NCBI GenBank assembly: GCA_000708835.1
Contig: DF237098.1
Coordinates: 86,312 to 150,311 of the forward strand
Source: Klebsormidium nitens
Taxonomy: Eukaryota > Plantae > Klebsormidiophyceae
Direction: 5' to 3'
DNA length: 64,000 nucleotides
Below are positions 20,093 to 41,000 of this stretch, in pieces. A program made the translations under genes and the position numbers. Below the pieces are notes generated by a model. That model made no database searches. It was not told where the DNA came from and saw nothing but the letters and a program-made list of their open reading frames with translations. Positions within the stretch are counted from its first letter, which is position 1; each line of letters begins with the position of its first letter.

Positions 20093-23000
20093 ATGGCCGC
20101 CCTCCGTCCTGATGGCACAATGGCCCCCGCACAGGGTCGCAAACCACTCGTCCCAATCACCGAAACCCCTTCCCAGGGGGGTCCCGCAAACCTCGCAGCA
20201 GAAACCCCCTCCGCTAGCGACGTCCAAGACCACTTCTCTCAAGAGATGCCAGATCGTCTGAGCAAGTACTATGAGCGGTCGCCAAGCCTGGCGCCGTCTT
20301 ACTTCAAGAGGGGGGGAGTTCAAACGGGTTTGGGGGAGGTTAACGGTGGAGTTAGCGGAGATCCTGAGTACTATAGGAGCCTGGGCAAGGCGGCGCAAGC
20401 GGCGTTGATCCACCTGATCATGAAGTATCATGAGGTGAGGTGCGGCTGCTGAACAGGGTTAAGAAGCTGGTTAAGGATGGAATGGAATTGTGAGTCTGGG
20501 AGTGCACTTGATGTGCCTGGTTGGCGTTTGGATCGACATGATCGATGGTTGTTCCAGGACCGACGCTCAAAATGTTGCTCAGACGACAGCTTCGATGCTA
20601 GAAACTATGACTTGGGTTGCTTACAGAAAGCCTGAGCGGCAAGATTGCTTACAGAAAGCCTGAGCGGCAACATGCGCCACAAAACCAACATTCAAACAAA
20701 GGGGCACAAGCCATGCAGGAGAGTGCACTTACAATAACCATGCATGCTTTACAGGAAACTTCTCGACTGCGCTCGCTGTTGAGAAACCCACCACAAGACC
20801 CTTTCACTCCTTTGATCAGCAAGCTGAAGGGAGGCTTCAACAGGTTTCACAATTGCCGGTGGTGTTCTCGGATGGGTCAGATCAAATTTTGTTTAGTTAG
20901 TAAGCGGCCAACGTCCAGCACAGTCAATTTTGGCGAGAAGTTTGCGGGCCATCAAGTTTGGGAATGCATGCAGCGGTTCTAACCCCAAACCTAACCCCTT
21001 TTGCAGACCCTCCTTCAAAAAGGGCTGACGGCCGAGGCTGAGAAAATTTCGAGCTCTTTGAAGGCTCTGAGAGATGACCCTATCGGCGACGCAAATAAGG
21101 AACTTACGGGGATGGATCTCTTGATGAAGGACGGTCTTCTGCAATACATGCTCAAGATCGGACCCTTGTTGCCGACACTCCCCGCTCAGGTCCGTTCTCC
21201 TGCTTCTTGCCAAGCAGGCCCTTACTGCTCTTGGCGTCGCATTTGTCAACCCACTTTTCAGCTTTATGATGCGGTCCGCTATAACGATCTACCGAACGCC
21301 TTTGTATTCTCAATCAGAGGGCTCAATTTTAGGAACCAAGCTCCACCTATCGTACCATCAGAAGATCCACCCCCCGACTAAATGGCGCCAACAAGCCGCC
21401 GTTCAGGCCCGTGCCAAAAAGTTACGTTGAGATGCCTACAGCCGGTGACATGTTGTCAACAGTAAAGCTCCATTTCGTACCTAAGACATAAATGACGCCT
21501 AAAGGTCCTGTGTCAAATCGGCGTCTTTCAGTCGCTCACGACATAAATGGTGCTGTTTTGATGCCAAACAAGTGCGTCAATCGGCATCCATCTGGTGGGC
21601 ACCTTTCTGGCCCATCAAGAGTACAAATCTTTCGGGGGGGTGAATTTCTGATGACCAGATCGCAAGTTTCATACATGAGGTTCTCTCTTGGCAACTGGGA
21701 TTTGTGTGCATCAGTATTGAGATGAGGGGAAGGAGACAAAAACGACGGATAATTGAGTACTTGTGTTTGGTGACATCAGGTTTTTTGGTTCTATGTCCTG
21801 GCAACCGTGGATATTCCCCCCATCAATGGGACATGAGATTGGACGGTTATGCTGTAAAAAGACGAGTATGCTGAAAGCCGAGAAAATGAGGAGACTCTCG
21901 CAACACGCGCTCCGTGGCCGACCCTTCTCTCTCTGTTTCTGTCCTTAAACTTATTATATTCGTTGTGAAGCTCCATTGCGTTTACCAGATAGAGGTGAGG
22001 AGCGAGTAAACAGAGGTGTGTCGGGCCCTTGAGACTGGCAAATGAAAAAGAATCTTTCTTCGTCACGGATCATATCCTTCAGCTGTTCAACGATAGGGAC
22101 AAGTGAGAGCGGGTGATTAAGTTATGAGGAACTCCGCTCCACTGCTGCAACTCCGTTGGCCTTCTTCCCAAAACAGCAGATTATGTGATCTATCCAGTAC
22201 AGTAGTCTCGATTTCATCTTGAGTGACGGTTATGTTTATTGTGGTCACGCCCCTGGGACGGGTCGAGCCCATAGTACGGTGGTTTGGATGAGTACTGGTG
22301 CGGAGCATGTTGACCTTGGGTTTAGGGTTGTCGTTTGCACTTCAATCGAGTCCGGGGAATTGATTCAACTAGCTCCACGTAGGCCTAACTCAACGTTCAA
22401 GACATACACTCATCAAACTTTCTCCCGCTAACCAGGTGGTCACCTTCAAGAACCTGAGCTACTCATCCAAGGTGACGTTCACAAAGGGGACGTACGAAAC
22501 TGTCGGCACTCAGGTGGGCAGTAATTTCGACTCTGGCTACTTCTCCCCACTCGGTATGCGACTCGAAACCGTTTCCAACTATCAAGATGAGGTCTGAGCC
22601 GTCAAAGCGCAGCGCAGCCCTTTACTAGTCTTGTATCGACCTCTGGCGAGATGAATACTCCTTGGTTTCATTTTGGGCCCGGCCCATCTCCTAGTCTGTT
22701 TTGCAGTTCCATAGGTGTTCCAAAGGTGGCAATATGCAAAGTATTTCGCTCGACGAGCCCGGTTATGGGATTTCGATGATGTCAGCTAATGCTTCCGTAT
22801 CAAAAACTGGCTTTCTCCGCCCATCCGTTATTCGTCTTTCATTGAAACCCTGAAACTGAGGTGATCAGATCGGCATCGTCGATAACGCTGATAGTTCATC
22901 CTACGTCTCCCCATGTCCCCAGGTAATTGGTCTCGGGACCCAGTTCGTCACGAAGAAGACCACAGGTGACGTGGACATCCTCAAAAACGTCACGGGCTAC

Positions 23001-26000
23001 GTCATGCCCGGGACGATGACCCTCGTTCTGGGCGGGCCTGGCTCCGGCAAGTCGACTCTGCAAAGTCTGCTATCGGGGATGCCCCACAAGGACAAAACAA
23101 CGACGATCAAGGGCGAGGTACGCGGCTTCTCGGAAACTTTATTTTTGAGGATCTTGTTGAGGGCTTTTAGAGTCTATGTTTGCAGGTTCTAACATCATGA
23201 CTTAGCGAATCCCGCTCTATGCACACACTGCTTGCGGGGATGCCACACAAAGATAAGGCGACCACGATAAAGGGCAAGGTAGGCAAAGGGAACTTCGGGA
23301 ATTTGTTTGTGTTTTCGCTCCACTTTTGCTTATCGGACCTCAAAAGTCCACATTTGCAGACCCTATGCTTAGGGCTTGAAAAAGAAGAAAGCACATCGCT
23401 GACAGCGCCGTATTCAACAGCCTTTCTGAATTCGCAATCCCGGGGACGCAAGCGGACTTCCGCTCTGTCTGCTTCACGAACATCTCATTCCCTTTAAGAA
23501 CTAGAGCGATGTCATTCTGGCCCGCAGGCCCTGTCCCCTCCAAGCAAATCATCGGCGGCCCGTCTGAGAGCGGCGACTTCGCTAACCGGAAGCTCGCCGC
23601 TGCCCTGCTTCACTTGAGGACGTCCTTTCTAGAAAGTGTATGGACACAAGAAAACAAGTAGTCGGAGGTTTGATTCTTGCAGGGTCCCTTGATGCGGAAG
23701 CACGTCGGTGGGGGTCCGTTCCAAGGTGCCAACTTCGACGTCCGAAAAGTCCCCCCTCTAGTGGAAAAGCAGGCCGTTCTATGAGCTTTTTGCAAGAACA
23801 GTTTGCAACTAAGAATGAAGCGGAGACTTTTTTTGCAGGTTTCTTACAACGGTAAGCATGTCACCAATCGCCCATCTTTAAGCTCTGACATTCCAATTCA
23901 GATTCCGTCGCTTATCCAATAGCCCGATCGGTTCACTCGTTTTCTTTACAAACTAGAGCGACGTCTTTTCTTCGCAGGTTCGGTACAACGGCAAGCACGT
24001 CATCGGCGGCCCGTCTGAGAGCGCCGGCTTCGCCGTCAGGAAACTCGCCGCGCTAGTTAAACAATCGGACGTCCATTTCGCGGCCTTGAGCGTGCGCGAG
24101 ACGCTCGAGTTTGCGCGCAGTTGCACGCAAGTCTGGACCTTTGAGGAGATGTTCCGGCGCAGCCCCGAATTGCGGGAGGTTTTTGGCGCGGTCCTCGCGC
24201 AGGGGAAGGATCCGAAGCTGGAGAACGTGATCAACATTCTGGGTCTCAGGTAGGAAATCCAGCTTCCTTTTCTTTCGTGATCCTCTCCAAAATGTTTGTA
24301 GTCGGATATTTCAGGTTCCAGTTTTGCGTAGGGTTGGGGTCAAATGATCGACATTCTGGCCTCAGGTAGGGTCGCTGACTGTCTCTCCCTTTTTCCTTCT
24401 TTTCTGAGAAGTGTTTGAACACTATGCATGTGTCTGGTTGTACTCCGCACAAATATGGGGTGCGAAGTGATCAGAATTCTGGGTCTCAGGTAGGAAAGAC
24501 AGCTGTCTTTGTAATCTTCAGTTTTTCGTTGATTCTTAGTAAGACTGCGGAGTTGGAATAGCATCCGCCAAAATGTCATGCGCCCTGCGCCCGTACCCCT
24601 ACTAACCACCAACTTAATCCCGTCCAGTCCCGTCCCGTCCCCCTGGTGCTCATCTCTATATACACATCATGCAGTGTAGACTTGCAGGCGGACCGAACAA
24701 CTGTGAAACCATCGAGAATAGCAGCCCCAATCAAATGCTCTTCCTGAAACGGGAACTTTCTGGATGTCGCATGTGTGGTGAGTGTGTTGCCCTTTGTTGG
24801 AAACTAGGCAGCAGACCCCGTCCTGCAAAGACGTACAAATCACAAGCTAAGGCTTGCAGACTGTCCTTACCTTCAGAAATTTCTGCGTCGCCCTTTTCGC
24901 AAACTTCTGTTGACGTTTTCTATTCAACTTTCAGGCGCGTTCTGAACATGCCGGTGGGCGGTCCAATGACTCCCCCCACGCTCACCGAAGACGAGCGGCG
25001 CCGCGTTTCCGCCGCGGAAATGGTCGCCGGAACGTACGTCCTCCTCTTCCTAGACGCCTTTGCCACAGGGGTCGACGCGGCGACCGCATATGACATCGCG
25101 AGCGGGCTACGGGTTCTGGCCCGGGTTAGGCAGCTGGGAATCGTGGCGAACATCGTTAATCCGCCCCCGGAGGTTTTCGGGTTGTTTGATCGGGTTATAC
25201 TGCTGGACCGGGGGAGGGTGGTTTACCAAGGGCCGAGGGCGGATGCGGTTCCTCACTTCGAGTCGCTCGGGTGAGGATTGTGCGTCTCTACTCCAAGTCT
25301 TTACATATCTCGGCATTTCAGCTTGGATACTTTGCACGTCAGGGGAGTAAATTCTTCTGCAAATGTTTACGAGTCACCATTTTCCGGTGATTTGAGACTT
25401 TGTTGTCCACGTATCTAGCGCGAATGGATCATGCAGGCGTCAGAAAAGCGTTGTTTAAGACCTCCTTGGCATGCTCAGGGTCCTGGACAGCGTCCCTGCT
25501 CGTCCTCGTTGCCCTTCTGAACCGTCCCGGAAACCCCTTTTCATGTAATTAAACCCGATCTCTCAGATGATCAGTTTCCAGGGCGCTCAGCTAGTACTCT
25601 AGTACCGCTGACCTAAGCAAGGGCAACCATGTTCTCGACCTTGACCCAATCCTCAAATTGATCGAAGTTACTTCCTTCGGGCGGCTGTTTGGCCCCAGTG
25701 CTGACTCCAGACTAAACCCCTCCTGCAGGTACATCAAACCCGACTTCCTGGACATAACCGAGTTTCTCCAGGAGGTAACTTCCCCTGACGGTGCCCAGTG
25801 GTTGTCCCCCGGACACTCCCCTCTCGACCTCGGGGGGTTCGTTTCCGCCTATGAAGCTACCCCCCACTACGCCGACATTTTGCGGGTGGTTAACTCCGCC
25901 GATCCCCCTCACGTTCTCTCCGTCAAGGCCCCCAAACCGCTTGGGTTAAATCTCCTGGCTCGAAACGGCGTACCAGCAATCGCGCGGATCGAAGCGAGTA

Positions 26001-29000
26001 GTTCGCTGACGTCAGCGGAGCAGACGGTCCACTTCACCGGGGCCGTGAAGGAGGGTGACGTCATCACGGCGGTGTCTGCTCCCGAGGGGGGGCTGGTTTA
26101 CCTGGCGGGGAAGGGGGGGGAAGCGAGCGTGGAGGAGCTCGAGGCGCGGCTTCACGAGGCGGCGGATCCAGTCCGGTTGCAACTAGAGCGGGCGACCCCA
26201 GAGGTGCGATTTGCTCATTCGCCTCGTTCCGGAGTTTCAAAAACAGAGGTCCCGGAGTCTGAGAGCGAAGACGTGGCGAGCTTGACATGATCTTGTTCAC
26301 TTCTTCCGTCTTCGACGTGTGACACTTTCACTTCCCACTATTTGTAGAGCAACGTCTCCTGATTTTGAGTGGCGTCATCGTTTCTTGCTTCAGTTGCGGT
26401 CAAGTGTAAGTAACTTCAGCTGACGTCACAGGTACTGCAAGATCATCGCAACATTTTGTGCGTGTCCGCAGGGAACTAGTTGCTTTCGGGTCTCTTACGT
26501 CACAGGAAGCGACGTGGGTCAATCCAGACCCCACTTTGAAACCGATATTCTTTCTTTTGGTAGCGCTTTTTTTCTTCCCGTTCGCTTCCCTTCCGCTTGT
26601 TGCAGTTTCGGGCCCCCTCCAGATGTCGTAGCGCCTCCTCCCAGATGCATTTCTTAGTTGCCATTCTTCCAGTCTGACGTTTCCCGGATTGGTTCCTTCG
26701 CTTCTTCCTCTACCTCCGCCTTCTGTGCATTTAAAGGCAGCTCCAGTTCCGTTCCGACAGCGGCAGAGTGCGATTTCGTCAAGCGGAATTGGTTCTGCAT
26801 AGATTCTTGCGTCTGTGTTGGTAGCGGCAAAGTCCGGTCCCTTCGGCGAGTTTCGTTTCGAACTTTCTTCGCGATTCTGGTTCCACTCCGGCAACGGCAA
26901 AGTCCGCTTTCGTTTTGCGGGGTTGGATTTTCTGCGCAGTTCCGGTTCCATCCTGGCAGCGGCAGATACCGTTTTCGTCCGGCGTCGTTCGTTTTACGCA
27001 AGTAATGACACTCAGATAAGCATAATCTTGCCCTGAACCGACTTTTATCAAAGCCCTGATTCCCTTCATCCTTAAAAAGCCTTATACACCCTTAAAAGCC
27101 TTATACACCCTTAAAAGCCTTATACACCCTTAAAAAGCCTTATGCATAACACCCAAAACCCAAAAAGTTGTTTCCTCTTCGTCGCAGCCTGACGACAAGG
27201 ACATCATCAATGAGCAGTTCACGCAGGAATATTCGCTGCCCTTTTGGGCGGAGTACCGTTTCCTGTTCGACCGGGCCTGGAAGGCGCAACTGCGCGGGAA
27301 GCTCCTGCTCTATTTCCGAGCGTTCCAGGTAGCACCCCACTTCTAGTAGTTCCTTCTTTGGTATGCCATCTATCTGATGGACCCCTCTGGAAGCTTTACA
27401 CTTCTCGACAAGGTGGCCCTTTTCACTATCTTTCTGCGCATGCGCACAGTGCCAGAGTCCCTCTTCCGGGAGATAGTGTTCATCGACTCTAATAAATTAT
27501 CCTTTCATACAAAGATCGGGACGGTGGATCATTCCCTCCCGCTTTGGCTGCAATGCTCGTTGCAGGGTTGCAGCTTTCCTTACGGCGATGTTATTATAGA
27601 AGGTAATTCTTATGGATGTTAACCAAAGTAGAAGTTTGTGTTCCTTTGGATCACACTCATTTGGCTTTGACTAGGGAGCTCTCTTCATCAGATTGGAAAC
27701 AGTTTTCGTAGAAAACTGTTCAACCTGTTGCTCTTTACCTTGACGTCCTTCAGTATGGTATCTGCCTGACGCTTCCAAGAGCATATCTTCCGAAGTTTCA
27801 GGTTACCTTCATGTCCCATCCCGATACTCAACGCAACAAACCCTTTGCAATCGAACCGTCTCCTTACACCTTTCAAATTACGTTCATCTCCCTTCAAGTT
27901 TTTGCTGGAACCATATTCTGTCTACGGATCCGCCTTCACTTACATAACATTTTTCTGGGATTTGGTCACCTCTAACTACGTATCAACGGCTTTTCCCCAG
28001 GAATGATCCCAGCCCCTCTTTCAAAAGATTCGTTCTTATCGCTTTGCAGTTGAGCTTCATTTCCCTTCTGGTATCTCGACGGCTCCGGCGCTTCGCTTCA
28101 GTGAACCTCCTCGCTTCTTTTTTGATCAGATTCAGAGTAGAACTCATCTTCTGTTCAATGGTTTCTCTTACGTTTTAGATCACTTCTCTCTCTCTATTCA
28201 GATCACGTTCATCTCCCCTTTGTGGGGACCATCTTCTGGCAACTACGATTGCGCCGACTTCTCTCGCGAAAGAACCTCCTCGCTTCTATTTCCCACAGCT
28301 TCATTAGACATATCGAGTTCTGATCAAAGTCTTCTCTCACGAATCATTTTATTTCCTTCTCTTGTTTCAGAGCACGTTCCTCTCCCTTTTCGTGGGGACC
28401 ATCTTCTGGCAACTCGACGACTCCGCCGACTTCTCTCGCGATTGAACCTCCTCGCTTCTTTCTCCCACAGCTTCATTGAAAAAGTCAAGGTTCTGATCAA
28501 AGTCTTCTCTCTCGAATCATTTCATTTCCTTTTCTCGTTTCAGATCACGTTCATCTCCCTTTTCGTGGGGACCATCTTCTGGCAACTGAACGAGTCCGCC
28601 GACTTTGCCCATATGAACACGCGCCGCGGAGTCGGTTTCCTCTCCCTCATGTCAACTTTCCTGTGCAACGCCATCCAACTTCCCGGTCAACTGGCAGACC
28701 GGGCGGTTTTCTACAAGCAACAGGGCGCCCGGTTCTACCGGCCCGGTTCGTACCTGCTCGCGAGCGTTGCGGCCAACTTCCCCTTCTCGTGCCTGGAGGT
28801 GCGGCCGGACATCCTTGGATCTTGGCTTTGGGGTTTTGTTAGCCTCTGAGGGTTTTCCAAATTCTTTATCTTGACGAAATATCAAAAGTGGATTCCTCGG
28901 AGGTACGGTGTGATTCCTAAAGCTGTAGCGTTGTGGACAACTCCCCCTTCTCGAGCTTCGAGGTATATCTCTTTGAATTGAGCGCAGCATGCGTTAGAAA

Positions 29001-32000
29001 CAGAAACCTTCACCACAGAAAACTCTACTGATGTTGGGTTAACCAAAGAAAACTCAGCCACAGAACGCTCCACCACAGAAAACTCCATCAGTGTTGGGTT
29101 TACCACAGAAAGCTCAACCGCAGAAAGCTCCACAACCGAGAGGTCCACCAGTGTTGGGTTAACCACAGAAAGCTCCCAACCCAACACTTGAGAGACTATT
29201 CTCAAAGCCACCTGCTTTGCACCCGTATCCGCCATAGACCTCCACACTAACCTCACCTGTCCGAAGGTGGAGAGCTTACTTTTCCCTAACGCTTACACTC
29301 CATGAAATCGATCTATGTCTATGTAAAGCGGTGTTCAACTTTGTCCACTTCTGTTCCGCCACAAAAGCGTTTACGGGAGAAGGTGACGTGCGCTTGTACC
29401 TTTGCCCCGATATGAGTGAGATACGCGAGCCCCTAGTTCCAATTCATCTAGCTTGTGAAGGACTCAAATCAGTCGCTGAAAGTTGGATGGAGCAGACAAG
29501 TCACCAATATCGTCTCTCACCCGTAGCTTTCCCTGGTCCGCCATAAAGCGGTTTTGTGATTGAGAATCGGAGCTCTCTGCCAGCGTTCATTAGAAAAGTT
29601 TCATTCTTGGAGTCACAAACACCGACAAATGTCTCAGAGAATCCGATCCGGAAACATCATAGCCTTTTCGCGCAGAAACATCATAGCCTTTTCGCGCAGG
29701 CTCTCACGTATGGCGTGATCGTCTACTTCATGACGGGCTTGTCTCTGCACGAGGGCAGCGGTCACTTTTGGCTGTTCCTGCTAGTCATCTTCCTTAACGT
29801 GCAACAAGGGGCGCTCCTCGTCCGCTGGCTCAGTTCGTTCGCACCTGCAATGGAAACGGCCGCAGCCTTGCAAGGTGAAGCTTGAGAAATGGGTTTGGGT
29901 CCAGGTTTGGCTTTAAGTTTTGGCTAATCATGCTGGTCAGTCTCCCAAACGTCCAACAAGGAACGCTTCTTGTCCGCTGGCTCAGTTCTTTCGCACCGGC
30001 CTTGGAAACGGCGGCAGCCTTGCAAGGTAAAGTCTAGTTAGAAAACACAAGACCTGGGTTTGAAACCAGGTTTAGTTTTGAAGATTTGGCTGTTTCTATT
30101 GGTCAATTTTCTGAAACCCCGACAGGGGGGGCTTCTGGCTCTCCGCTGGCTCATTCCTTTGCACCGGCCATAGAAACAGCGGCAGCCTTGCAAGGTGACA
30201 TTGATCTGATGTGGGCTTTGCTAATGTTGACACATTGGGGCCTCTCGAATATTCAGACTGTGACTTTCGCCGCTTTGATAATAAAAGTGCTTGATCCGGT
30301 AAGGGAAGTATCTTGACACTGCCAAGCACTCCGTTTTCTCACACCGTTAATCTCCCACTTGGCAGTGCCTCCAATCCATTCGAAGGACGCGCCCTGGGAT
30401 ATGGACTGATTTTCCGACTGTGCAGGAATCTTCATCGTGATTTTTGTGGCGTTTGCTGGCTTCCTCGTGCCTCGCAACAAGATACCCGACTGGTGGTGAG
30501 TATTTATGAAGTCGCTTTTCTGCTACTCTCTGGCCTATGTTTCCGGGATCTGCACGAGAAGCACTTTGGGAAGAAACCGGTAATCAGTGTCTTAGAACTA
30601 GTGACTGCGTTATCTGCTCAAGGAAGTTTTCTTTTCGCTTGGAAAATCCTCCTCGTAAGTCCCAAACGCTTCGGTCGCTTTCCAAGGCTGGTCGCTTCGG
30701 ACCAAATAAGCCGATCAAGAGTGTCGATTAGCTTCCATTAGCGCACTTCAGTAAGCAGAGCCTCTCACTTCAAAATGTGAACGATGGAGTCCCGAACTTG
30801 CGTTGGGCTTGACACCATAACCACTCCCCGCTTATTGCGCAGGATCTGGGCGTATTGGATGGACCCGCTCCAGTGGGGCATCTCGATCATCATGATAAAC
30901 GAGATGCGCTCAGCGACGTATAAGCAGCCGTGCGCCAGCTTTACGCCCCAGTACTTATTGGCCCATACGCTGACGGGGCCCTGCCGCCAGGCCCCAGACC
31001 GCGAACTGGGCTTCGCTTATCTCGTCCAGTGGCAACTGAAAACAAGCTGGTAAGACGTTTTTTTCTCTTGTTTGGCCCCATTTTGCATTCACCAGCCAAC
31101 AGGTAGTAGTAAGACTGAGATTGTGGGATATCACGGTCGTAAAATGTGACTAATTGTGCTTCTTGTTTTCTGCTGAGGCGAACCTCAGAAATTGGCTCTC
31201 TTAGCTCCCGTCTAGAAGGCAACGTAGACTAGTGTACCGCGACTGGGAATCAGTCAATCCGTCAAGCTCGGACACGACGACGTTGTGCTTCTCAGTTCCG
31301 CTTTCGGGAAGCCGAAAAGCGACTTCCTTGATTGGCTCATTTGCAAATTCAATACAGCTCTTAGATTGAGATTGAGCGGGACATCTCAGGCAGGCGGTCA
31401 TTGAGCTCAGCAGAAATGATTTCTGTTTTGTCAATTATTTTACGGAATGTGTATGTCCTCCTAGGTACTGGGTCCCTATCGGCGTCGTCGTATACCTGAC
31501 ATGGTGCGCCCTATGGCTCGGCCTGTCCTACGTGGCACTCTCCGAGATCCGCCACGTGGTGGTCCCCAAAGTCCGCCCTTTGGCGGCCCGTAAGGGCTCC
31601 GCAGCGCCTGAGGTTAAGGCGGGAAACCCGGAGAAAGAGACCGCGACAACGCACGATGCTGAGAAGGGCGCCAATATCAAGGTAACCGACCTTCCTTCCT
31701 TTTCAATTTTCAAAGACTCTTTTGCTCAAATTTCCTGGCCAGGTACTTCTTATGAAGCTTTGATTTATATGGATCTGGGGAAAAGGCAGGAAATCCGGAT
31801 GAAGAGACCGGAGCAACGCACGACGCTGAGAAGGGCGCCAGTCCGAAGGTAAATGTCGTTTTCCATTCAGTCTTTCCTTCTCCTGTCTTCCTTTGATTGA
31901 AAGCTAGGCCAGGTATTCTAAAAAGCCAGGAGTCATATCGACCTAGGGAAAGAGCGGGACAACCGCAGAGAGTGACCTGTGTAATACACGATGCAGAAAA

Positions 32001-35000
32001 GGGCGCCAATATGAAGATCACGGACCATTAACTTTGTCTTCTTCTCCTTTCTTCCATCTTTTGTTTCCGTTGATGAGTCCAGATCTGCTCATGACGTTCG
32101 TGAGAACAGATTTCGATGTTTATGGAAGAAACGGGTCGCTGCTTCGAAGCAAGCTGAAAGAGCGCCTGTGCTGACGTCAGAACTCCTACGCAAATTGCGT
32201 TATTTCTCGTCGGAATCCTTTGCGTCGGCCGCTCTGAAGCCGCCCATCGCTCCCAGGAACTGTCGGGAACGGAAATGTTTCCGCACTTGGTGCGCACTTC
32301 GCGAGCGAAGACCAGGGTATCATTCTCTCGGTTCTTGCAATTCCTTCGAAAAGCCTCGTCGGTTCCTCGCCGCTTTCAATAATAACCTGAAGCACTAGAG
32401 ATGTTTCCGCTCATTCTCAATCATTACTTCCCCAGCCAGTCGAGTCGTCACGACCTGAGCCAGTCGTCCGTGAGTCGCGACTTCAAGCAGATTCCGTAAG
32501 CAAATACAGAAGACTCCACCAATCCTTGCGGATATCGGACTCTATGACTGAAATGCCGTTACGCTTTCCTAACCCAGCCAAACATGACGTCACTCCCCTT
32601 CCTCCCAGTCAGGCTGATCTGACACGACCTGTGCCACTCACTGACTCTCCCATATATATGCGCAGATTAGTAAGAACAGTATGCAAAACCCCATAAATTC
32701 CTGGCGCTTTTCGAACGGTCGTGACTGAAATTCCGTTGCGCTTTCACTCCACCCATGTATGACATCACTCCCCTTCTCCTCGGTCACGCTGAGCTGGCAT
32801 GACCTGAGACACTCCGTGTCTCCCCCCGACTACGAGCAGACTCTTGAAAAACAGTAATGTAACACTAGCTACATTTCTGGTGGTTTTCAAACTGTCGTGA
32901 CTGAACTCCGTTCCCTTTCCCTCCAGCCATGTATGACGTCACTCCACTTCCTTCCCGTCACGCTGAGCTGGCACGACCTGAGCCACTCGGTGGTAATCCC
33001 CGGTGTTGGCGAGTCGAAGAACGTACTCAGTTACGTGTCCGGTTGGGCCAAACCGGGCCGTCTACTGGCGCTCATGAGCAGCGGGGGCGCGGCGAAGTCG
33101 CTGCTGCTGCGGGTTCTTGCTGGAAAGATGGTGAGACGGTTTTTCTTGGAGTAAAGTGCTCTTACGTCGAAGATTCTTGCTGCAAAGATGGTGAGGACCG
33201 TTCATTCTCGGACTGAGATAGTCTTACGTTGAAGGTTCTCGCTGGAAAGATGCTGAGACGGTTATGCTGGGAGTAACATGCTCTCACGTTGAACTTTGGA
33301 GTACAGGCCTGAGCTCTCGCCAAGAGATGCAAGCAACGGTTAGTGACTCGAAGACGTCTCTTGGGAGGATGAGAGGAGTATTCATTCCGTAAGCGAAAGC
33401 CAACGGACGGACGAGTGGAATGAACGAGACCGGAAGGGTTTTAGAACCCACCTCTTTTGTTTCTCAAGGAATGTTGAGACTTTCGTAAGCAGTTATTGGT
33501 TGCACATTTTGCACCGCCTTCATCCCAAGGATGCTAAACATTGTCGAGTCAAAAGCCTCGGATATCCGAAACCCATGGTTCGAAGAGCCTGTTTCCTCCG
33601 CGCATACAGAGCTAGCTTATAGAAACACGCGACGGGTTCCGTGAAAAGTCTCAAGCCCTTTCTCTGGCGAATGTCTTCCTCAGTCGCACAAGATTACGTT
33701 GCTTTTGCTTTCTGAAAGGCCAGGATTTGTTCCTGAGGATTCAGATAGGGTTATCCCTTAACTTTGACCGGTCCCGGGCCAAACAACCGGGCAGATCCTG
33801 GATGACGGTTACCCTCGGAACCCCGCCACTTTCTGCCAATATTGCACCATGGCTAAAATTGTGGAGAGTCAATTGCCATTCATGACAGCTTCTGACAGGC
33901 CTGCTCCTTAACCTTACCCTTAAACGTAACCTAAACCCTGACAGGTCCCGGGGCGAACGACCGGGCAGATTTTGGTTAACGGCTACCCGCGAAACCCCGC
34001 CACTTTCCGCCGGTACTGCACCATGGTGGAAAGAGTGGAGAGTCATTCGCCGTTCATGACGGTCCGCGAGGCGATCCAATTCAGCGCCCGGTTGCGTCTA
34101 CCGGGGACGACTACTGAGAGCCAAAGGGAGGCGTTCATTGACCAGGTTTGTAACGCGAGCAATTCCCCGGTTCTGCATTGTTCCCTTAACCACACTTAAC
34201 GGATCTGGGTGGATCTTGAGTCCTTCAACTGTCCAGAATCTGCCTTGCTCTCTTTATCTGCACAGTCTTATCCAGCGCCCGGTTGTGTCTACCGGGGACT
34301 ACTACCGAGGGCCAAAGGGAGGCGTTCGCGTTGACCAGGTCAGCTTAATCTCTAATTATTTGCGCTTGCTTCCTGTGGTTGGACACGCAGTTGGGAGCAG
34401 CCCACTTCAGCGCCCGATTAAGCCTACCGGCGAGTATCACCGCGGGCCAAAGGGAGGCGTTCGCTGACCAGGTCGTCGTGCAAGCGACCTTCCAGTTTTC
34501 TAGTGTTCGCTTGACTCACTCTGTCGATCTGTGTGGACCTCGAAATTTTACCCATTTTTGGGTTTGCATTCGCTTCTCGATTTGGCGCCCGGTTGTGTGT
34601 TCGGTGAGCACTACCGGGGGAGAGAGAGTGCCGTTGGTTCACCAATTCAGTTAACAGCCCTTAGAAAGGCGGAGGACCTGACCCTGACGCAATGAAACCA
34701 GGCCAGCGTCGCGCTGAATGACGCGCGCAATTTGACGGTCGCCGTAGCAGAACTCCTGATCTGAAAACGGTACCCGTGAAATGCTCAAAGGTTCATTCTC
34801 TCTCTCTTGAAAAGATCCTAAATGTCATGGAGCTCCGCCCCTTCAAGAACGTGCTGGTCGATTCCTGGACCAAGGCGGCGACACACTAGCTAACGCGCAC
34901 AAGCTGACGGTCGCCGTAAACGGATCCCCTTACTTGAAACCTCCAGTTGCGGAAATTGGAAGTCTGAAACTGAGCACATTATTCTGTACAGATTCTGGAT

Positions 35001-38000
35001 GTTATGGAGCTCCGCCCCTTCAAGAATGTGCTGGTCGGTTCTCTTGGCAAGGCCGGCGTCACGCTCGCTAATGCGCACAAGCTGACGGTCGCCGTCGAAC
35101 TGGCCGCAAACCCGTCGACGCTTTTGATGGACGATCCTCTCTCCGGACTCGACTCGCGCTCGGCAGTGCATGTGCTGCACTGCATCAAGAACGCGGCGGT
35201 CGACTGCGGCCGAACCGTCGTCTGGTCAGTCAATTGAACTCTCTTTCGAATCTTTGCTAGGTTTCGGATCTCCGTTGTTTGTTCGTTGACTTTCTCCTGC
35301 TGTTCGTAAGTTTTCGTACTTCCTCTTTCGATTGTGAACGCCCGAAGCGTGCTCTACTGCACAAATGCGGCGGTCAATTGTGGTGGAACGGTCGTAGTTG
35401 CTTCAGCTTCCATTCCACCAGTTATCTTGGACTCGCTTGTATGATTCTGGACTTTCTTGTTTTCTGTTACATCCGACGCGCTTTCTGCTTTTTGACTGCC
35501 CTAACTTTTAGCCAAAGGAGGTTGGGCACTAAAGGTTTTTCTTATCTATCGTCAGATAGTGCATACTGTTTCGCGTAATCCTTACTGAATAACTGTGCAA
35601 AGTTCCCTTGCCTCCTCTCCTACAAAAGTAGCCGGCCTCTTTTCTTGATTCGCTGTCCTCACTTTAATAAAGCGCCATCCTTTAGGAAGGCGTTTGACAT
35701 GTGGGCTGCCAGGTGTCCATCCCCCCAATGTGCCGATTGCACGGCGTCCATCACCCAATCTGAGGCACGTGCTTTGCCTAACTCCGCTGACGTGCGCCGC
35801 TACGGAACGTTCTGACACCTGTCCCACAAATGCAGCGCAATCACCAGCCCGAGGCACAGTGCTCACAGTACTTGCGTGCTATCAGCTTAAAAGGGTTTGA
35901 ACTCTTAGGCCTTTTGTTGTGCTGGAACTCATTATGCTCACATCTGCAGGCTACGTCGCACATCCGATGAAGCGTGTGACTCGTCCGCTCGACTTGTCCT
36001 TCGCTAAGTCTGAAGAGACTGATTTCCGTGACGTGTCCCCTTCTCATTCGCAGCCCATCCGCAGCCAAGAGCATAAGGCCAGCGGGTCTTTGCCTTTTTT
36101 TCGAACGAAAGTATCTGACACGTGATTCTTTCTCACTCGCAATACCATGTCGCAGCCCAACACACGTGCCATGGGCGACAACTTTGCTGTCGCACGCGCA
36201 GACTTTGATTCTTGACGCTTGTTACTCTCTCATCCGCAGCACCGTTACGCAGCCCGGGGCACGTTGCCTGGGCGTCTTCGACGATCTGCTGCTCCTCAAC
36301 GCCGCGGGCGAGACGTGCTACTTCGGAGAACTTGGCTACCGGGGTCAAAAGCTCATCGTAAGCTTATTCACTCCCAAGTTTGTAGGAAGCTGGTAATGAA
36401 CTCAAGACTCTGTCGCTACTAAAATTGCTTAAATAGCCAAGCCTTTAACCGGGCAAGACAAACGAGAAACCCTACTCAGACTGCTTCAAGCGCTCCGCAA
36501 CCGAACCACTCCTTCCTCCGGAACTCACCCTACCCGCCCCTCTGGTGCGATGTTATCATTCATTACGTTCACTATACATAGATTCAGGACTTTTAAAATA
36601 TGGCGCTTGTACACATCGTGGAGGTTAGCAACGAAAGATATGGCGGCGTAGGACCCTTCGCGCATACCTTCACAGGGCGACAATCGAGCCGGCCACTTTG
36701 CATACTTGCCAGGACTAGAGTCGGAGTTCTTCCTTGTTCATGGACTGGAACACCTGATTCAAACGAACTGACCAACAAAGGGAAATCTCGAAACAAACAA
36801 ACACTCCTATGAATCTGCCGTCTTGCTTCATGGCAACACTAGTACCCCTCGTAGCGACCCGCATTCCAAGCTTACAAGCCGGAAACCCTAAGAACGATTG
36901 TGTGTTGACCAGACACAGGGTCTTTTGCACCGTGGTCGATCGTATTTGGAGGCGATGCATAGAACCCCTTACATCGACTCGACCCTGACGTGTTCCGACC
37001 ATGTAAAGTTCGTGACCTTCTGTCGCAATCCATACTGTTGATTGCAGATTGAGGGTTGAACCTGCTTGTGGTAATTTTCAAAAACCATTGGTACCAAACA
37101 CACACTCTTGAATTTTCACAGTCTTATTTCGAGGCAATTCCCGGGACCCCTCGCATCGACCGTGACGTCAACCCGGCCACATATGTGCTGGTCACTTGGA
37201 TAGTGTCAATCGAATTTCAGCGAGCAGACGTGAAATTCATACCTTCACACCAAAGAGTCTTAACCTACATTTTGCAGTCTTACTTTGAAGGGATCCCCGG
37301 GACCCCTCGCATCGACCGGGACGTCATTCCGGCCACATATCCGCTGGCCTTATCGTTGGTGTTGATTAGTTCTAGAGGGCAGAATGTCCATCCCAAACGC
37401 TCTTAATGTTTCTTTGCAGTCTTACTTCGAGGGGATCCCTGGAACCCCACGTATCGACCGTGACGTCAACCCGGCCACTTATGCGTTGGGCGTCACTGGA
37501 GCAGGAATTGACCCGAGCAGGACCGGTGGAAACCATACGTTCCGAGACTACGCGTTTGAGTACAGAGTCAGGTGACGACCTTTTGACTTGTGCATCGAAG
37601 TTCTGGAGTTTCAGTGTCTTGAGGGCATACCATAAGCCAGCCGAGTTGCCGTGCGGGTAAAGACGAAGGGAGCAGGGGCACATGCGATACATACGTGATA
37701 GGGTCTGAGTTCGTTGATCTCCTTCAACCCTTCCTGATTCAGTATCCCCGACTCCCCGACTGTTGTTCTCAGAACTCCGTCCATCGGTAAAGGAGAGCGG
37801 TTTTGTTGTTGTCCTTTTCTTGCACGCCTCCTGTGCGCGCAAAAGCAGAGACAAATAGCTTGTTAAAGTGTGACTGTGCTTCATTTGTAGATCTGGAACT
37901 AACGAAGTTGTTCTGACTATCTTTTAAGTTCCTTGAAGCGCTTTCTTTCAGCGACCCCGGCTTTCGCCAGGTCTCTGAGGTCGTCTTTGAAATGACCTCT

Positions 38001-41000
38001 TTGTGAATGTGTTGTTGCCCTCGGAAACATTTCCTTCCGCTTTCTACGTACCTGCGTGTTGTGTTCGACGAGACGTTTCGACTTTTCCTGTGCACTTTTT
38101 ATCACTTTTGTCAGTGGCTTATCCTCTGACCCATCTCCTATCCCCCCTCAGCGACCTGGCCTTCAGCCAAGTGGGCGAAATCGAGTCGCTCCGCCGCGGG
38201 AAGGGCAAGCTGGGCGACGAGCCATCGCTTATGGGCCCGGCGGCGCCTTATGCCCGGCAGTTCTGGGAGATAGTCCTCCGTATGCAGCGCTACCACTACC
38301 GCAACCTGCACTACAGCTGGGCACGTGTCATGTCGTCCGTGATCCTCGGCCTCATATTGGGGTCCATCTTCTTGAACATAAGCTATCATACGACGCCGGG
38401 CATGCAGGTGCGTATGACTGCAGTGACTCGTGCACTTTCTCTTCTCGTGTCTCGTTTCTACTACTTGGCTTCCCATGAGAAGTCAACCGAAGTTACTGGC
38501 AACTTCAGTCCCGCCTGTCGATGTATTGTCAGTGTTATGAAACCCTGAATACTTCCTGAACCGTTCTTCGAATCCATCGAACGGCTCTCTTTGCAGGCAC
38601 GTGCCGGTTGCATCTTTGTTACTCTGGTCATTAACGCAGGCCCAAGCTGATTGCGGCATTTTCCAAATTGCCACCACCGCATAACCCCAGACATTTACTC
38701 GGTTATAATCGGGTATTGTGCTGACATGTGGCGGGTTTCCTTTTCATCATCCTGGTGAATAATTCGTTGCGCGCCCACTGTTCACCAAGATTTACTTTCC
38801 CTATCGCAGAGCGTTTCCAACCGCTTCTTGTCTGATCAAACGGGTCTTGTGATCACAACGATGAACCCGCCACTTGACCTGCACCGCAGCAGAAAAGACG
38901 ATCTGTCCCCCATTGCCAAGTACCAACCGTTCTTCGGCTGATCAAGTGGCTCCTGTGCAGGCACGTTGCGGGTTCGTCTTTGTAATCTTATTTTTGACGA
39001 GGTTGGCGACGCCGAAAATGCGGCAAAAGACACAATCAGCACACCGTCTCGAAATAACGACTGTTTCTCTGCGGCTGATCGAACGGCTCCCGTGCAGGCA
39101 CGTGGCGGATTCGTGTTCATCATCCTGGTGATCAACGCGGTGGGCAACGCCCAAAACGCGGCGGGGCAGGTTCTGAGCCAGAGACCCGTGCATAGGCGGG
39201 AGGTCGGGAACGGGATGTACACTTTTGCGTTTGCAAACGTGGCGTGGGCGCTTGCTGAGGTACGTGGGTTATAAACTTGGGTTAAGGGTCCGTGAGAAGA
39301 GGGTTTTGGGTTTATGGGCTCGGTCAGAGACCCGTTGCATAGGCGGGAGGTCGCGAAAAGGCATTTACACGTTCGCGTTCGCAAACGTGGCGTGGGCGCT
39401 CGCTGAGGTACGTGGGTCATGAACTTTAGTTAAGGGTTCAACCCACCCCATTCTCATCCCGAGAAGATAGGGTTTTGCGTTCTCGGGTTTTGGTCAGTAC
39501 TCGTGCTTAAGTGGGAGGTCGGGAACGGTATGCACACTTTCGCGTTCGCAAACGTGGCTTGGGCGCTCGCTGAGGTACGTAAAGCTGAAACTTAGAGGCG
39601 TGAAAACTTTTCTGTCCGTGGTTTTTCTAGGCTTTCGGGGTTCCATTGGATCTCTGGGTCTCAGGTCAGCGGCGTAGAGAAAGGAGAGGACATCGAAACA
39701 GGGTTTGGAAACGGCATCTATAATTTCCGTTCGATCGCAAATGTGGGTGGGCGCTCGCTGGGGTACGTGATCTATGGATTTTAGTCACTTGTCGGTCGTT
39801 GTTTTGGGGTTTGGATTTGAGGGTGTCGTCAGCGATTTCGACAGAAGCGGGAGGACATATGCGGGAGGTCAGGAACGGCATGTAAAGTTTGCGTTCGCAG
39901 AATTGCGTGGGCGCTCGCTGAGGAACGTGAACTGTGGGAGTCAAAATGTCGAAAGCTAAGGATCCGTAACCGCAATTTTGCTGGTATTGTTATTAAAGTG
40001 TATGGTCAGCGGCTCGTGAAACAATGAGAGGTCAAGAAACGCATGTCGATTTTTGTCTCCGTTTGTAAACGGGGAGTGGGCGCTCATCAATGTGATACGT
40101 AAAGATCAGGGTCCGTCTTTCTTCAGTTTCCAGGGGTTTTTTAGATTACTGGGTTCCTCCAAGTTTTGATTTATGCTCTAAACCGCTAAAGCAAACTGTT
40201 AAGCGCTATTGCTCGGTCCGTGCAGGTCCCGTATCTCGCCATATCGACGCTCGTTTTCTGCAGCATTGCATGCACGATGGCCAATATCGTGACGGGGTCT
40301 TTTGGGACGTTCCTCCAATTCTGGTTCACGCTCTATATGTTCTGTCTCGCTGTCACCTACTTCGGAATGCTCGTCGCGGCTGTCAGCCCCACTCCCGTGG
40401 TGAGTCCAAGTTGGCAAATACTAAAGTTCGTTATCGTCAGATATGTATCTTCTTTTGTTTGCTGGGTTCTTTTGTGATTTTCAGAGGTCTGCATGTTCTG
40501 TCGCGCAATCAGCCTCTTCGGAATGATCTTCGCGGCAGTCAGCCCACTCCCGCGGTAAGCTCAGGTTGTAATCCTCATAATCGTTATCGTAAGAAATGTT
40601 TTTTTGTCTGTTTGCTGGGCTTTTTACGATTCTTCAGAGATGGAGAGGTCTGCATATCTTGCCTCGCCGNNNNNNNNNNNNNNNNNNNNNNNNNNNNNNN
40701 NNNNNNNNNNNNNNNNNNNNNNNNNNNNNNNNNNNNNNNNNNNNNNNNNNNNNNNNNNNNNNNNNNNNNNNNNNNNNNNNNNNNNNNNNNNNNNNNNNNN
40801 NNNNNNNNNNNNNNNNNNNNNNNNNNNNNNNNNNNNNNNNNNNNNNNNNNNNNNNNNNNNNNNNNNNNNNNNNNNNNNNNNNNNNNNNNNNNNNNNNNNN
40901 NNNNNNNNNNNNNNNNNNNNNNNNNNNNNNNNNNNNNNNNNNNNNNNNNNNNNNNNNNNNNNNNNNNNNNNNNNNNNNNNNNNNNNNNNNNNNNNNNNNN

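What the first reader, a model, noticed from the sequence alone, without database searches (positions are those of the whole stretch)
23031..36255. Both composite ATPase sites of the ABCG look catalytically crippled: a candidate pseudo-ATPase receptor, channel or scaffold
Seen in NBD1: Walker A intact (GGPGSGKS, 23031), signature LTEDE instead of xSGG(Q/E) (24981), Walker B LFLDA without the catalytic Glu (25044). Seen in NBD2: Walker A SSGGAAKS (33077), Q-loop VER with no Gln, signature VTLAN, Walker B LLMDD (35121), H-loop TVTQP with no His (36241). Established: PDR-type ABCGs tolerate one degenerate site, but the site formed by the NBD2 Walker A/B/His and the NBD1 signature is normally canonical. 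The reading frame is intact over about 25 exons and the structural motifs are conserved, so this does not look like a pseudogene. Together with the PDZ insertion, this suggests a non-pumping function.
Basis: partly seen in the sequence, partly recalled or inferred. Interest (0 to 1): 0.8.

Follow-up and report, generated by a model that had tools for sequence, protein, structure and literature searches.

The report
Conserved ABCG transporter lacking catalytic ATP sites
This alga expresses an intact ABCG-type membrane transporter whose two ATP-splitting sites have both lost key catalytic residues, and its orthologues from other green algae to mosses, ferns and one flowering plant share the loss, so it is probably an old family of ABC "pumps" that no longer pump in the usual way.

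Summary
The gene is a 25-exon, all GT-AG, 1561-aa open reading frame on the + strand (20246-44483). No alternative exon carries a canonical motif.

In 190 aligned full-size ABCGs, the NBD1 signature and the NBD2 Walker A, Q-loop, Walker B and H-loop are canonical in at least 177 of about 180 proteins outside one clade. That clade holds this gene and ten relatives: Spirogloea, Mesotaenium (two), an unnamed zygnematophyte-like transcript, Physcomitrium, Marchantia, Riccia, Diphasiastrum, Adiantum and Tasmannia.
- All 11 clade members have lost the SGG signature.
- 9 of 10 have lost the Q-loop Gln and 9 of 10 the H-loop His.
- NBD2 Walker A and Walker B are broken in different ways in several lineages.
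- The NBD1 P-loop and Walker B Asp are mostly kept.

So this is not a pseudogene. It is an old streptophyte orthologue group that most likely binds ATP at one site without hydrolysing it.

The insert folds as a PDZ domain, but canonical-motif relatives carry it too.

A non-pumping role remains an inference. The scan had noted the PDZ insert before, not the motif loss.

The parts
20246..44486 (+). Whole coding region of the full-size ABCG gene (NBD1-PDZ-TMD1-NBD2-TMD2). 25 exons, 1561 aa from ATG 20246, stop at 44484-44486. In-frame ATGs at 20093 and 20120 could add up to 51 aa.
   Evidence: tblastn of orthologues; junction refinement; assembled ORF with no stop and all GT-AG introns; upstream ORF
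20246..22513 (+). Exons 1-3 (20246-20434, 21007-21189, 22436-22513): N-terminal extension conserved in the clade, plus the start of NBD1
   Evidence: N-extension identity is 0.42 within the clade and 0.25 among canonical relatives
22923..23117 (+). Exon 4: NBD1 Walker A, GGPGSGKS at 23031-23054 (intact P-loop)
   Evidence: Pfam ABC_tran E=1.3e-6
23978..24249 (+). Exon 5: NBD1 Q-loop region (VKQSD, Gln kept)
24935..25270 (+). Exon 6: NBD1 signature LTEDE (24981-24995, in place of VSGGE), Walker B LFLDA (25044-25058, Asp kept, catalytic Glu replaced by Ala), H-loop position NIVNPP (25149-25166, no His)
25729..26203 (+). Exon 7: end of NBD1 plus the inserted PDZ-like domain (core about 25910-26191, with a PLGL loop and a GDVITAV motif)
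   Evidence: AlphaFold2 pLDDT 85; all top 50 Foldseek PDB matches are PDZ domains, TM-score on the target up to 0.74; no Pfam hit
27188..31681 (+). Exons 8-13 (27188-27328, 28544-28798, 29700-29874, 30426-30495, 30843-31049, 31465-31681): TMD1 and the linker to NBD2
   Evidence: Pfam ABC2_membrane E=7.9e-12 and 2.1e-7; the end of exon 13 at 31681 matches the loose end of the RNA contigs
32927..33130 (+). Exon 14: NBD2 A-loop position (His at 32984 where relatives have Tyr) and Walker A SSGGAAKS (33077-33100; both consensus Gly lost, Lys-Ser kept)
   Evidence: RNA contigs
33945..34145 (+). Exon 15: NBD2 Q-loop, VER with Arg (34032-34034) in place of Gln
   Evidence: RNA contigs
34992..35224 (+). 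Exon 16: NBD2 signature position VTLAN (35058-35072), Walker B LLMDD (35121-35135, Glu replaced by Asp), D-loop SGLD kept
   Evidence: RNA contigs
36240..36357 (+). Exon 17: NBD2 H-loop, CTVTQP with Thr in place of His (TVTQP at 36241-36255)
   Evidence: RNA contigs
37420..44483 (+). Exons 18-25 (37420-37571, 38152-38407, 39098-39259, 40226-40399, 42341-42425, 43014-43038, 43285-43364, 44284-44483): TMD2 and the C-terminus
   Evidence: RNA contigs for exon 18 and the start of exon 19; homology and splice sites for the rest
32566..35420 (+). Unused intronic echo copies of exon edges around the NBD2 exons (for example 32566, 32741, 33172, 33234, 33756, 34267, 34402, 34693, 34865 and about 35334). 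None carries a canonical ABC motif.
   Evidence: repeat families D5, D7, D8, D12, D16, D17; translation; skipped by the RNA contigs; motif scan

Best explanation

Site 2 (NBD2 Walker A, Q-loop, Walker B and H-loop plus the NBD1 signature) drives hydrolysis in every characterised PDR-type ABCG. Here it has lost:
- the SGG signature (LTEDE, with acidic residues where the two glycines contact the gamma-phosphate);
- the Q-loop Gln (Arg);
- the H-loop His (Thr);
- the Walker B catalytic Glu (Asp);
- both consensus glycines of Walker A.

Site 1 keeps what is needed to bind Mg-ATP: an intact NBD1 P-loop, the Q-loop Gln and the Walker B Asp. It lacks the catalytic Glu, the switch His and a usable opposing signature, much like the permanently ATP-occupied non-catalytic site of yeast Pdr5/Cdr1.

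Shown: the motif states, their conservation pattern, expression and intactness.

Inferred: the protein binds ATP at site 1 as a structural or regulatory ligand and cannot run the hydrolysis-driven alternating-access cycle. Its conserved function would then lie in the membrane domains, the PDZ-like domain and the N-terminal extension. The likely roles are a facilitator or channel-like path, a sensor or scaffold, or a regulator of the canonical PDZ-bearing ABCG paralogue, rather than a primary active pump.
For: - Motif positions were fixed by alignment to solved Cdr1/Pdr5, by a 191-sequence MAFFT alignment and by an L-INS-i alignment of the clade.
- Outside the clade, site-2 residues are canonical in at least 177 of about 180 proteins. 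Inside it the counts are SGG 0/11, Q2 1/10, H2 1/10, Walker A2 5/10 and Walker B2 DE 5/11.
- The tree places the window's protein inside a starred clade (96-100 SH-aLRT) whose branching follows the species tree: Klebsormidium, then Zygnematophyceae plus land plants. Its branch lengths are like those of canonical relatives.
- Walker A2 and Walker B2 are broken with different residues in different lineages, for example SSGGAAKS, SGEHGGSG, GSEAGGNT and GGSKESKN, and DD, DG, DN and NE. This fits relaxed constraint on a site that was already non-essential.
- The NBD1 P-loop (GK in 10/11) and Walker B Asp (10/11) are kept.
- The usual extra conservation of NBD2 is gone. The ratio of NBD2 identity to mean TMD identity is about 1.0 in the clade, about 1.5 in canonical PDZ-bearing relatives and about 1.6 in plant PDRs. 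TMD1, the PDZ insert and the N-extension are at least as conserved as in canonical relatives.
- The gene is spliced and present in transcript contigs of four studies, and the ORF is intact over 25 exons.
Against: - There is no biochemical evidence of any kind.
- From my own knowledge, not tested here: Pdr5 H1068A keeps ATPase activity, so loss of the H-loop His alone does not prove loss of hydrolysis.
- Several clade members (Spirogloea, Riccia, Marchantia, Diphasiastrum) still have a canonical Walker A2 and Walker B2 Asp-Glu, so the ancestral clade function may have included slow hydrolysis.
- Walker A2 in this gene keeps Lys-Ser, and Asp can sometimes support weak catalysis.
- The identity comparison across clades uses different taxon sampling.
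- No codon-level selection test could be run.
- The NBD1 exons lack direct RNA evidence here.
Confidence: 0.6

Rival explanations
1. It is still a primary active pump. ATP is hydrolysed, slowly or by substitute residues, at site 2 or site 1, and the motif changes only retune kinetics or coupling.
For: Half of the clade keeps a canonical Walker A2 and Walker B2 Asp-Glu. This gene keeps Lys-Ser in Walker A2, the Walker B2 Asp and both D-loops. The TMDs are conserved like those of transporters. From my own knowledge, H-loop and Q-loop mutants of Pdr5 keep activity.
Against: In this gene five separate catalytic elements of site 2 are changed at once, including acidic residues in place of the signature glycines. 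From my own knowledge, the second of these is the same kind of change as CFTR G551D, which abolishes ATP-dependent gating. Site 1 lacks the catalytic Glu, the His and a usable signature. Lineages have independently destroyed Walker A2 or B2, which is not expected if hydrolysis were needed.
Confidence: 0.25
2. It is a pseudoenzyme partner: a non-catalytic paralogue that regulates, traffics or anchors the canonical PDZ-bearing ABCG kept in the same genomes.
For: The degenerate clade branches from within the canonical PDZ-bearing ABCGs. Riccia fluitans has both kinds, P0001 canonical and P0003 degenerate. An earlier scan note reports a second PDZ-bearing ABCG elsewhere in this genome. Both kinds share the PDZ fold.
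Against: Full-size ABCGs are generally taken to act as monomers (my own knowledge). There is no interaction, co-expression or synteny evidence here. The second K. nitens copy was not examined.
Confidence: 0.15
3. It is a decaying gene or pseudogene, and the motif losses are neutral erosion.
For: Many catalytic residues are lost. This species' copy is the most degenerate in Walker A2 and carries a Walker B2 change as well.
Against: The 1561-aa ORF over 25 GT-AG exons is intact. Spliced transcripts occur in four studies. The protein is 42% identical to the moss orthologue over 1360 columns, and the clade's branching follows the species tree. The replaced signature is itself conserved (P-T/S-L-T-x-D/N-E).
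Confidence: 0.03
4. It is an exon-choice artefact: among the tandem exon copies, the real mRNA uses others that carry canonical motifs.
For: Nearly every exon has 1-3 diverged tandem copies 150-175 nt away.
Against: The echoes are partial, frameshifted or more degenerate. A motif scan of 19-46 kb on both strands finds no canonical Walker A, Walker B-DE or, in NBD context, signature or H-loop other than the NBD1 Walker A.
Confidence: 0.02

Closest known systems
Fungal PDR transporters Pdr5 / Cdr1 (solved structures 7P03, 9S2C, 9IUK)
   Same: They share the reverse full-size topology NBD-TMD-NBD-TMD and are the best PDB sequence matches for every NBD exon. Site 1 is degenerate in the same way: the NBD1 Walker B lacks Glu, NBD1 has no H-loop His and the NBD2 signature is degenerate.
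   Different: Their site 2 is fully canonical and catalytic (VSGGE, GASGAGKT, Q-loop Gln, LDEP, TIHQP); here all five elements are changed. Their NBD1 Walker A has Cys for Lys, whereas here the NBD1 P-loop is intact. They have no PDZ insert.
Canonical PDZ-bearing full-size ABCGs of green plants (Riccia fluitans R1flu_020884 = P0001, Closterium P0002, Chlorokybus P0019, Cymbomonas P0009)
   Same: They are the nearest relatives outside the clade. They have the same PDZ-like insert between NBD1 and TMD1, ending in the RLQLER motif in P0001, P0002 and P0019.
   Different: All ten ATP-site motifs are in the usual PDR state, with a canonical site 2.
'V1-Type' early-diverged full-size ABCGs of Viridiplantae (Cho et al. 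2020, PMC8359288)
   Same: The paper's taxon range is Chara, Klebsormidium, mosses, Selaginella and Amborella, with absence from other angiosperms. That matches the range found here: Klebsormidium to ferns plus the magnoliid Tasmannia.
   Different: The paper defines the group by phylogeny only. Its main text mentions neither Walker motifs, degeneracy, ATPase nor PDZ. I could not match identifiers, so equivalence is likely but unproven.
Plant PDR / ABCG36-type transporters (V3-type), e.g. Glycine PDR1 P0186
   Same: Same superfamily and topology, and the same ABC2_membrane TMDs.
   Different: They belong to a different, well-separated clade, have a canonical site 2 and have no PDZ insert (8 residues in the insert span against 98).
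ABC proteins that use nucleotide sites for regulation rather than pumping (CFTR, SUR1/2), and asymmetric ABCs (TAP1/2, ABCG5/G8); comparison from my own knowledge
   Same: They are precedents for ABC folds with a non-hydrolytic ATP-binding site used as a ligand site. CFTR G551D puts Asp at the second signature glycine, as here. The degenerate site of TAP1 has Asp after the Walker B Asp and no H-loop His.
   Different: All of them keep one fully competent catalytic site; this clade keeps none. They belong to other subfamilies (ABCC, ABCB) or are half-transporters.

Membership tests
Full-size ABCG (PDR-type) transporter | Reverse domain order NBD-TMD-NBD-TMD in one chain | tested here: met
   Colinear tblastn of 1400-1750-aa ABCGs along 20.3-44.5 kb; assembled model; Pfam ABC_tran on exon 4 and ABC2_membrane on exons 9 and 10
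Full-size ABCG (PDR-type) transporter | One canonical, catalytic composite site (NBD2 Walker A, Q-loop, Walker B and H-loop plus the NBD1 signature) | tested here: not met
   SSGGAAKS, VER, LLMDD, CTVTQP and LTEDE, against at least 177 of about 180 canonical outside the clade
Full-size ABCG (PDR-type) transporter | Degenerate site 1 of PDR type (NBD2 signature not SGG, no NBD1 H-loop His) | tested here: met
   VTLAN and NIVNPP
Full-size ABCG (PDR-type) transporter | ATP hydrolysis coupled to substrate export | not testable with these tools
   Needs biochemistry
Degenerate PDZ-bearing ABCG clade of streptophytes (probably part of the 'V1-Type') | Monophyly with Spirogloea, Mesotaenium, Physcomitrium, Marchantia, Riccia, Diphasiastrum, Adiantum and Tasmannia proteins | tested here: met
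   IQ-TREE LG+C20, SH-aLRT 96-100 for the nested clades
Degenerate PDZ-bearing ABCG clade of streptophytes (probably part of the 'V1-Type') | NBD1 signature replaced by P-T/S-L-T-x-D/N-E; NBD2 Q-loop Gln and H-loop His absent | tested here: met
Degenerate PDZ-bearing ABCG clade of streptophytes (probably part of the 'V1-Type') | Identity with the published V1-Type group | tested here: inconclusive
   The taxon range agrees, but no identifiers could be compared
PDZ domain | PDZ fold (a five- or six-stranded sheet with helices) | tested here: met
   AlphaFold2 pLDDT 85; top 50 Foldseek PDB hits all PDZ, probability 1.00, TM-score on the target 0.6-0.74
PDZ domain | Match to the Pfam PDZ sequence profiles | tested here: not met
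   No Pfam family at E<=1 for 25658-26290
PDZ domain | Carboxylate-binding loop (GLGF-like) and binding of peptide C-termini | tested here: inconclusive
   A conserved P-L-G-L/V loop and a GD-x-V/I motif sit at the expected places; binding is not testable here
Pseudoenzyme (pseudo-ATPase) | Loss of residues essential for catalysis in an otherwise conserved fold | tested here: met
Pseudoenzyme (pseudo-ATPase) | Maintained by purifying selection | tested here: inconclusive
   Deep conservation, a clade that follows the species tree, an intact ORF and expression all argue for it. A dN/dS test was not possible: no fern DNA was served, and the zygnematophyte pair has only 7 differences.
Pseudoenzyme (pseudo-ATPase) | Measured absence of catalytic activity | not testable with these tools
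   Needs an ATPase assay

The most novel reading that the evidence does not exclude
Streptophytes have kept, since before the split of Klebsormidium from the line leading to land plants, a dedicated family of ABCG 'pseudo-transporters' that have no catalytic ATP site. They would use one non-hydrolytic ATP-binding site, a PDZ domain and a conserved N-terminal extension to act as a membrane sensor, scaffold or gated facilitator. Most flowering plants would then have lost the family. This would be the first ABC exporter-fold family with both composite sites non-catalytic.
Probability: 0.4. Interest if true: 0.8.

Novelty: new variant of a known kind. Interest (0 to 1): 0.66.

Why it matters
ABC transporter mechanisms all assume at least one hydrolytic ATP site. 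Degenerate sites have been studied only as partners of a competent one.

A family conserved from algae to ferns in which the normally invariant catalytic site is dismantled, while the membrane domains, a PDZ domain and an N-terminal extension stay conserved, would be a natural experiment. It would show what an ABCG fold can do without a power stroke.

The family has members in the tractable models Physcomitrium patens (XP_024367765) and a Marchantia species, and canonical sister paralogues exist as built-in controls. The question is therefore directly testable by knockout, ATPase assay and cryo-EM.

It also gives a concrete molecular distinction to the published but uncharacterised 'V1-Type' full-size ABCGs.

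Tried and rejected
- **Alternative exons.** I checked whether the tandem exon echoes supply canonical exons. They do not.
- **The window's own database protein.** It was not returned by the all-against-all search or the word search.
- **Fern dN/dS.** The loci of the two Adiantum orthologues (genes of 51 kb and 68 kb) were listed without DNA.
- **Zygnematophyte dN/dS.** The two Logan transcripts (L001, L002) differ at 7 nt, 3 synonymous and 4 non-synonymous, giving pN/pS 0.43 with no statistical power.
- **Pfam on single NBD2 exons and on the PDZ exon.** Nothing was found. The fold search was needed for the PDZ.
- **Chance motif hits.** CIHQP at 31084 and VSGGQ at 19738 (+ strand) and 25816 (- strand) were rejected, because there is no NBD context or homology around them.
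- **Literature.** Searches for a PDZ-bearing or doubly degenerate ABCG found no description. Only the phylogenetic 'V1-Type' mention turned up.
- **Not done.** I made no second word search for the K. nitens canonical paralogue, because of its cost. I obtained no RNA evidence for exons 1-13 or 19-25, because read laying is capped at one call.

Full report
**What is in the window.** tblastn of full-size ABCG proteins maps colinearly on the + strand from about 20.3 to 44.5 kb. Extra small exons appeared in a more sensitive pass.

I refined each junction by frame, GT/AG and alignment score to five orthologues, and three by hand. This gave 25 exons, all GT-AG, and a stop-free ORF of 1561 aa running 20246-44483. 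In-frame ATGs at 20093 and 20120 could lengthen the N-terminus.

Earlier scan notes name the genome as Klebsormidium nitens and describe introns padded with tandem copies of exon edges. This gene is full of them: families D1-D20, spaced 150-175 nt.

**RNA evidence.** Seventeen runs hold 12-26% of the sampled words of 28500-36500, which is an exon-sized share.

I laid four runs from four studies on 32400-38399. Each gave one long contig (2.6-4.6 kb), 100% identical to the window, with GT..AG joints. Together they define exons 32927-33130, 33945-34145, 34992-35224, 36240-36357, 37420-37571 and 38152 onward. The loose upstream end matches the end of exon 13 at 31681.

The runs are only guessed to be RNA, but spliced contigs cannot come from genomic DNA.

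Exons 1-13 and 19-25 rest on homology and splice sites. Two contigs extend 3105-3123 nt upstream of 32925. That fits my 2793 nt of upstream coding sequence plus a leader of about 320 nt, but it does not prove the model.

**The motifs.** Exon-by-exon HMMER alignments to solved Cdr1/Pdr5 give the following equivalences.

| Element | Cdr1/Pdr5 | This gene |
|---|---|---|
| NBD1 signature | VSGGE | LTEDE |
| NBD1 Walker B | Asp-Asn | Asp-Ala |
| NBD1 H-loop | IYQCS | IVNPP |
| NBD2 Walker A | GASGAGKT | SSGGAAKS |
| NBD2 Q-loop | Gln | Arg |
| NBD2 Walker B | LDEP | MDDP |
| NBD2 H-loop | TIHQP | TVTQP |

The split codon at the 35224|36240 junction reads Cys, giving GRTVVCTVTQP. The NBD2 A-loop position is His where relatives have Tyr.

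The NBD1 P-loop (GGPGSGKS), Q-loop Gln, Walker B Asp and both D-loops are kept.

A motif scan of 19-46 kb on both strands finds no other canonical Walker A or Walker B-DE. It finds only isolated chance pentapeptides for the signature and H-loop.

**Relatives.** A search of 1.84 billion representatives with the NBD1 exon and a word search with one hit gave two kinds of close relatives, both with the insert between NBD1 and TMD1.

The first kind has canonical motifs:
- Riccia fluitans R1flu_020884
- Closterium
- Chlorokybus
- Cymbomonas

The second kind has degenerate motifs (names):
- Spirogloea muscicola
- two neighbouring Mesotaenium genes
- an unnamed transcript that groups with the zygnematophytes
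- Physcomitrium patens (annotated 'ABC transporter G family member 31/51-like')
- Marchantia paleacea
- Riccia fluitans R1flu_025525
- Diphasiastrum complanatum
- Adiantum
- the magnoliid Tasmannia lanceolata

I aligned 190 full-size ABCGs with my locally built model and counted canonical motif states.

| Motif | Outside the clade | Inside the clade |
|---|---|---|
| NBD1 SGG signature | 178/179 | 0/11 |
| NBD2 Walker A | 177/178 | 5/10 |
| NBD2 Q-loop Gln | 178/180 | 1/10 |
| NBD2 Walker B Asp-Glu | 181/181 | 5/11 |
| NBD2 H-loop His | 178/178 | 1/10 |

A more careful alignment of the clade confirms these states. It also shows that the replaced signature has its own consensus, P-T/S-L-T-x-D/N-E followed by the usual R-H-R-V/L-T/S-x-A-E-M.

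**Phylogeny and constraint.** An IQ-TREE (LG+C20) tree of 40 proteins places the window's protein in a starred clade with the degenerate proteins. Klebsormidium branches first, then Zygnematophyceae and land plants as sister groups. That is the species tree, so these are orthologues.

The clade nests among the canonical PDZ-bearing proteins, and its terminal branches are no longer than theirs. Tasmannia sits on a long branch at the base of the clade.

By inspection, Walker A2 was lost separately in at least five lineages and Walker B2 Asp-Glu in six, each time with different residues. That is the pattern expected once hydrolysis at that site had stopped mattering. The NBD1 P-loop Gly-Lys survives in 10 of 11.

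Mean pairwise identity by domain shows where constraint has shifted.

| Domain | Degenerate clade | Canonical PDZ-bearing relatives | Plant PDRs |
|---|---|---|---|
| NBD2 | 0.46 | 0.65 | 0.66 |
| TMD1 | 0.46 | 0.41 | 0.38 |
| PDZ insert | 0.42 | 0.33 | 0.44 |
| N-terminal extension | 0.42 | 0.25 | 0.34 |

Taxon sampling differs between the groups, so the within-group ratios are the safer comparison. NBD2 over mean TMD is about 1.0 in the degenerate clade, about 1.5 in the canonical PDZ-bearing relatives and about 1.6 in plant PDRs.

A codon-level test could not be run.

**The insert.** Exon 7, modelled with a 15-sequence alignment, gives pLDDT 85. The 50 best Foldseek matches in the PDB are all PDZ domains. 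Pfam does not see the domain.

Because the canonical relatives carry the same insert, the PDZ predates the loss of catalysis and is not evidence for it.

**Interpretation.**
- Shown: the gene is real, intact and expressed; neither composite site has a full catalytic set; and this is an old, shared state of an orthologue group.
- Inferred: site 1 still binds Mg-ATP without hydrolysing it, as in the non-catalytic site of Pdr5/Cdr1. Site 2 in this species cannot bind or hydrolyse ATP in the normal sandwich. The protein therefore cannot run a hydrolysis-driven transport cycle.
- Open: what it does instead. It could be a facilitator or channel, a sensor or scaffold acting through the PDZ, or a partner of the canonical paralogue.
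- Main rival: residual non-canonical hydrolysis. Half of the clade keeps Walker A2 and Walker B2 Asp-Glu, and from my own knowledge Pdr5 tolerates loss of the H-loop His.
- Effectively excluded: decay and exon-choice artefacts.

**Comparison with what is known.** Cho et al. 2020 (PMC8359288) describe a 'V1-Type' of early-diverged full-size ABCGs in Chara, Klebsormidium, mosses, Selaginella and Amborella, absent from other angiosperms. The taxon range fits this family. The paper's main text mentions neither motifs, ATPase nor PDZ.

Four full-text searches found no description of a PDZ-bearing ABCG or of an ABC exporter with both sites degenerate. That library lacks most subscription journals, so this is absence in what could be searched.

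I class the finding as a new variant of a known kind.

Noticed in passing
window 23219-39937 (repeat families D1-D20): Almost every exon of this gene has 1-3 diverged tandem echo copies of one edge, spaced 150-175 nt. Acceptor-side echoes lie upstream of the real exon (32566 and 32741 before 32927; 37114 and 37270 before 37420). Donor-side echoes lie downstream (31775 and 31943 after 31681; 34267 and 34402 after 34145). Where RNA contigs were laid, all echoes are skipped.
   Followed up: partly
window 33340-33827: Run X1 has a separate 488-nt contig wholly inside intron 14, at depth 4.6 against 56.8 for the mRNA contig. It could be a retained-intron or pre-mRNA fragment, or DNA carry-over.
   Followed up: no
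window 40670-41381: A run of 712 N lies in intron 21. Orthologue alignments run on without a gap across it, so no exon seems hidden there.
   Followed up: partly
window 25910-26191 (exon 7): The insert between NBD1 and TMD1 is predicted with confidence to fold as a PDZ domain, although Pfam does not detect it. The same insert occurs in canonical-motif ABCGs as far out as the prasinophyte Cymbomonas, so the PDZ-bearing ABCG architecture is old in green plants.
   Followed up: yes
window 20246-22513 (exons 1-3): An N-terminal extension of about 150 aa before NBD1 is better conserved inside the degenerate clade (0.42 identity) than among canonical relatives (0.25). Its fold and role are unknown.
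   Followed up: no
P0153 and P0050 (Mesotaenium endlicherianum ME000174S02102 / ME000174S02104): Mesotaenium has two degenerate-clade genes two gene numbers apart on one scaffold. This looks like a local duplication, and the two copies have different further motif losses.
   Followed up: no
window 31084 and 19738: Two isolated canonical-looking pentapeptides occur: CIHQP in intron 12 and VSGGQ upstream of the start codon. Neither has surrounding NBD similarity, so I take them as chance.
   Followed up: partly
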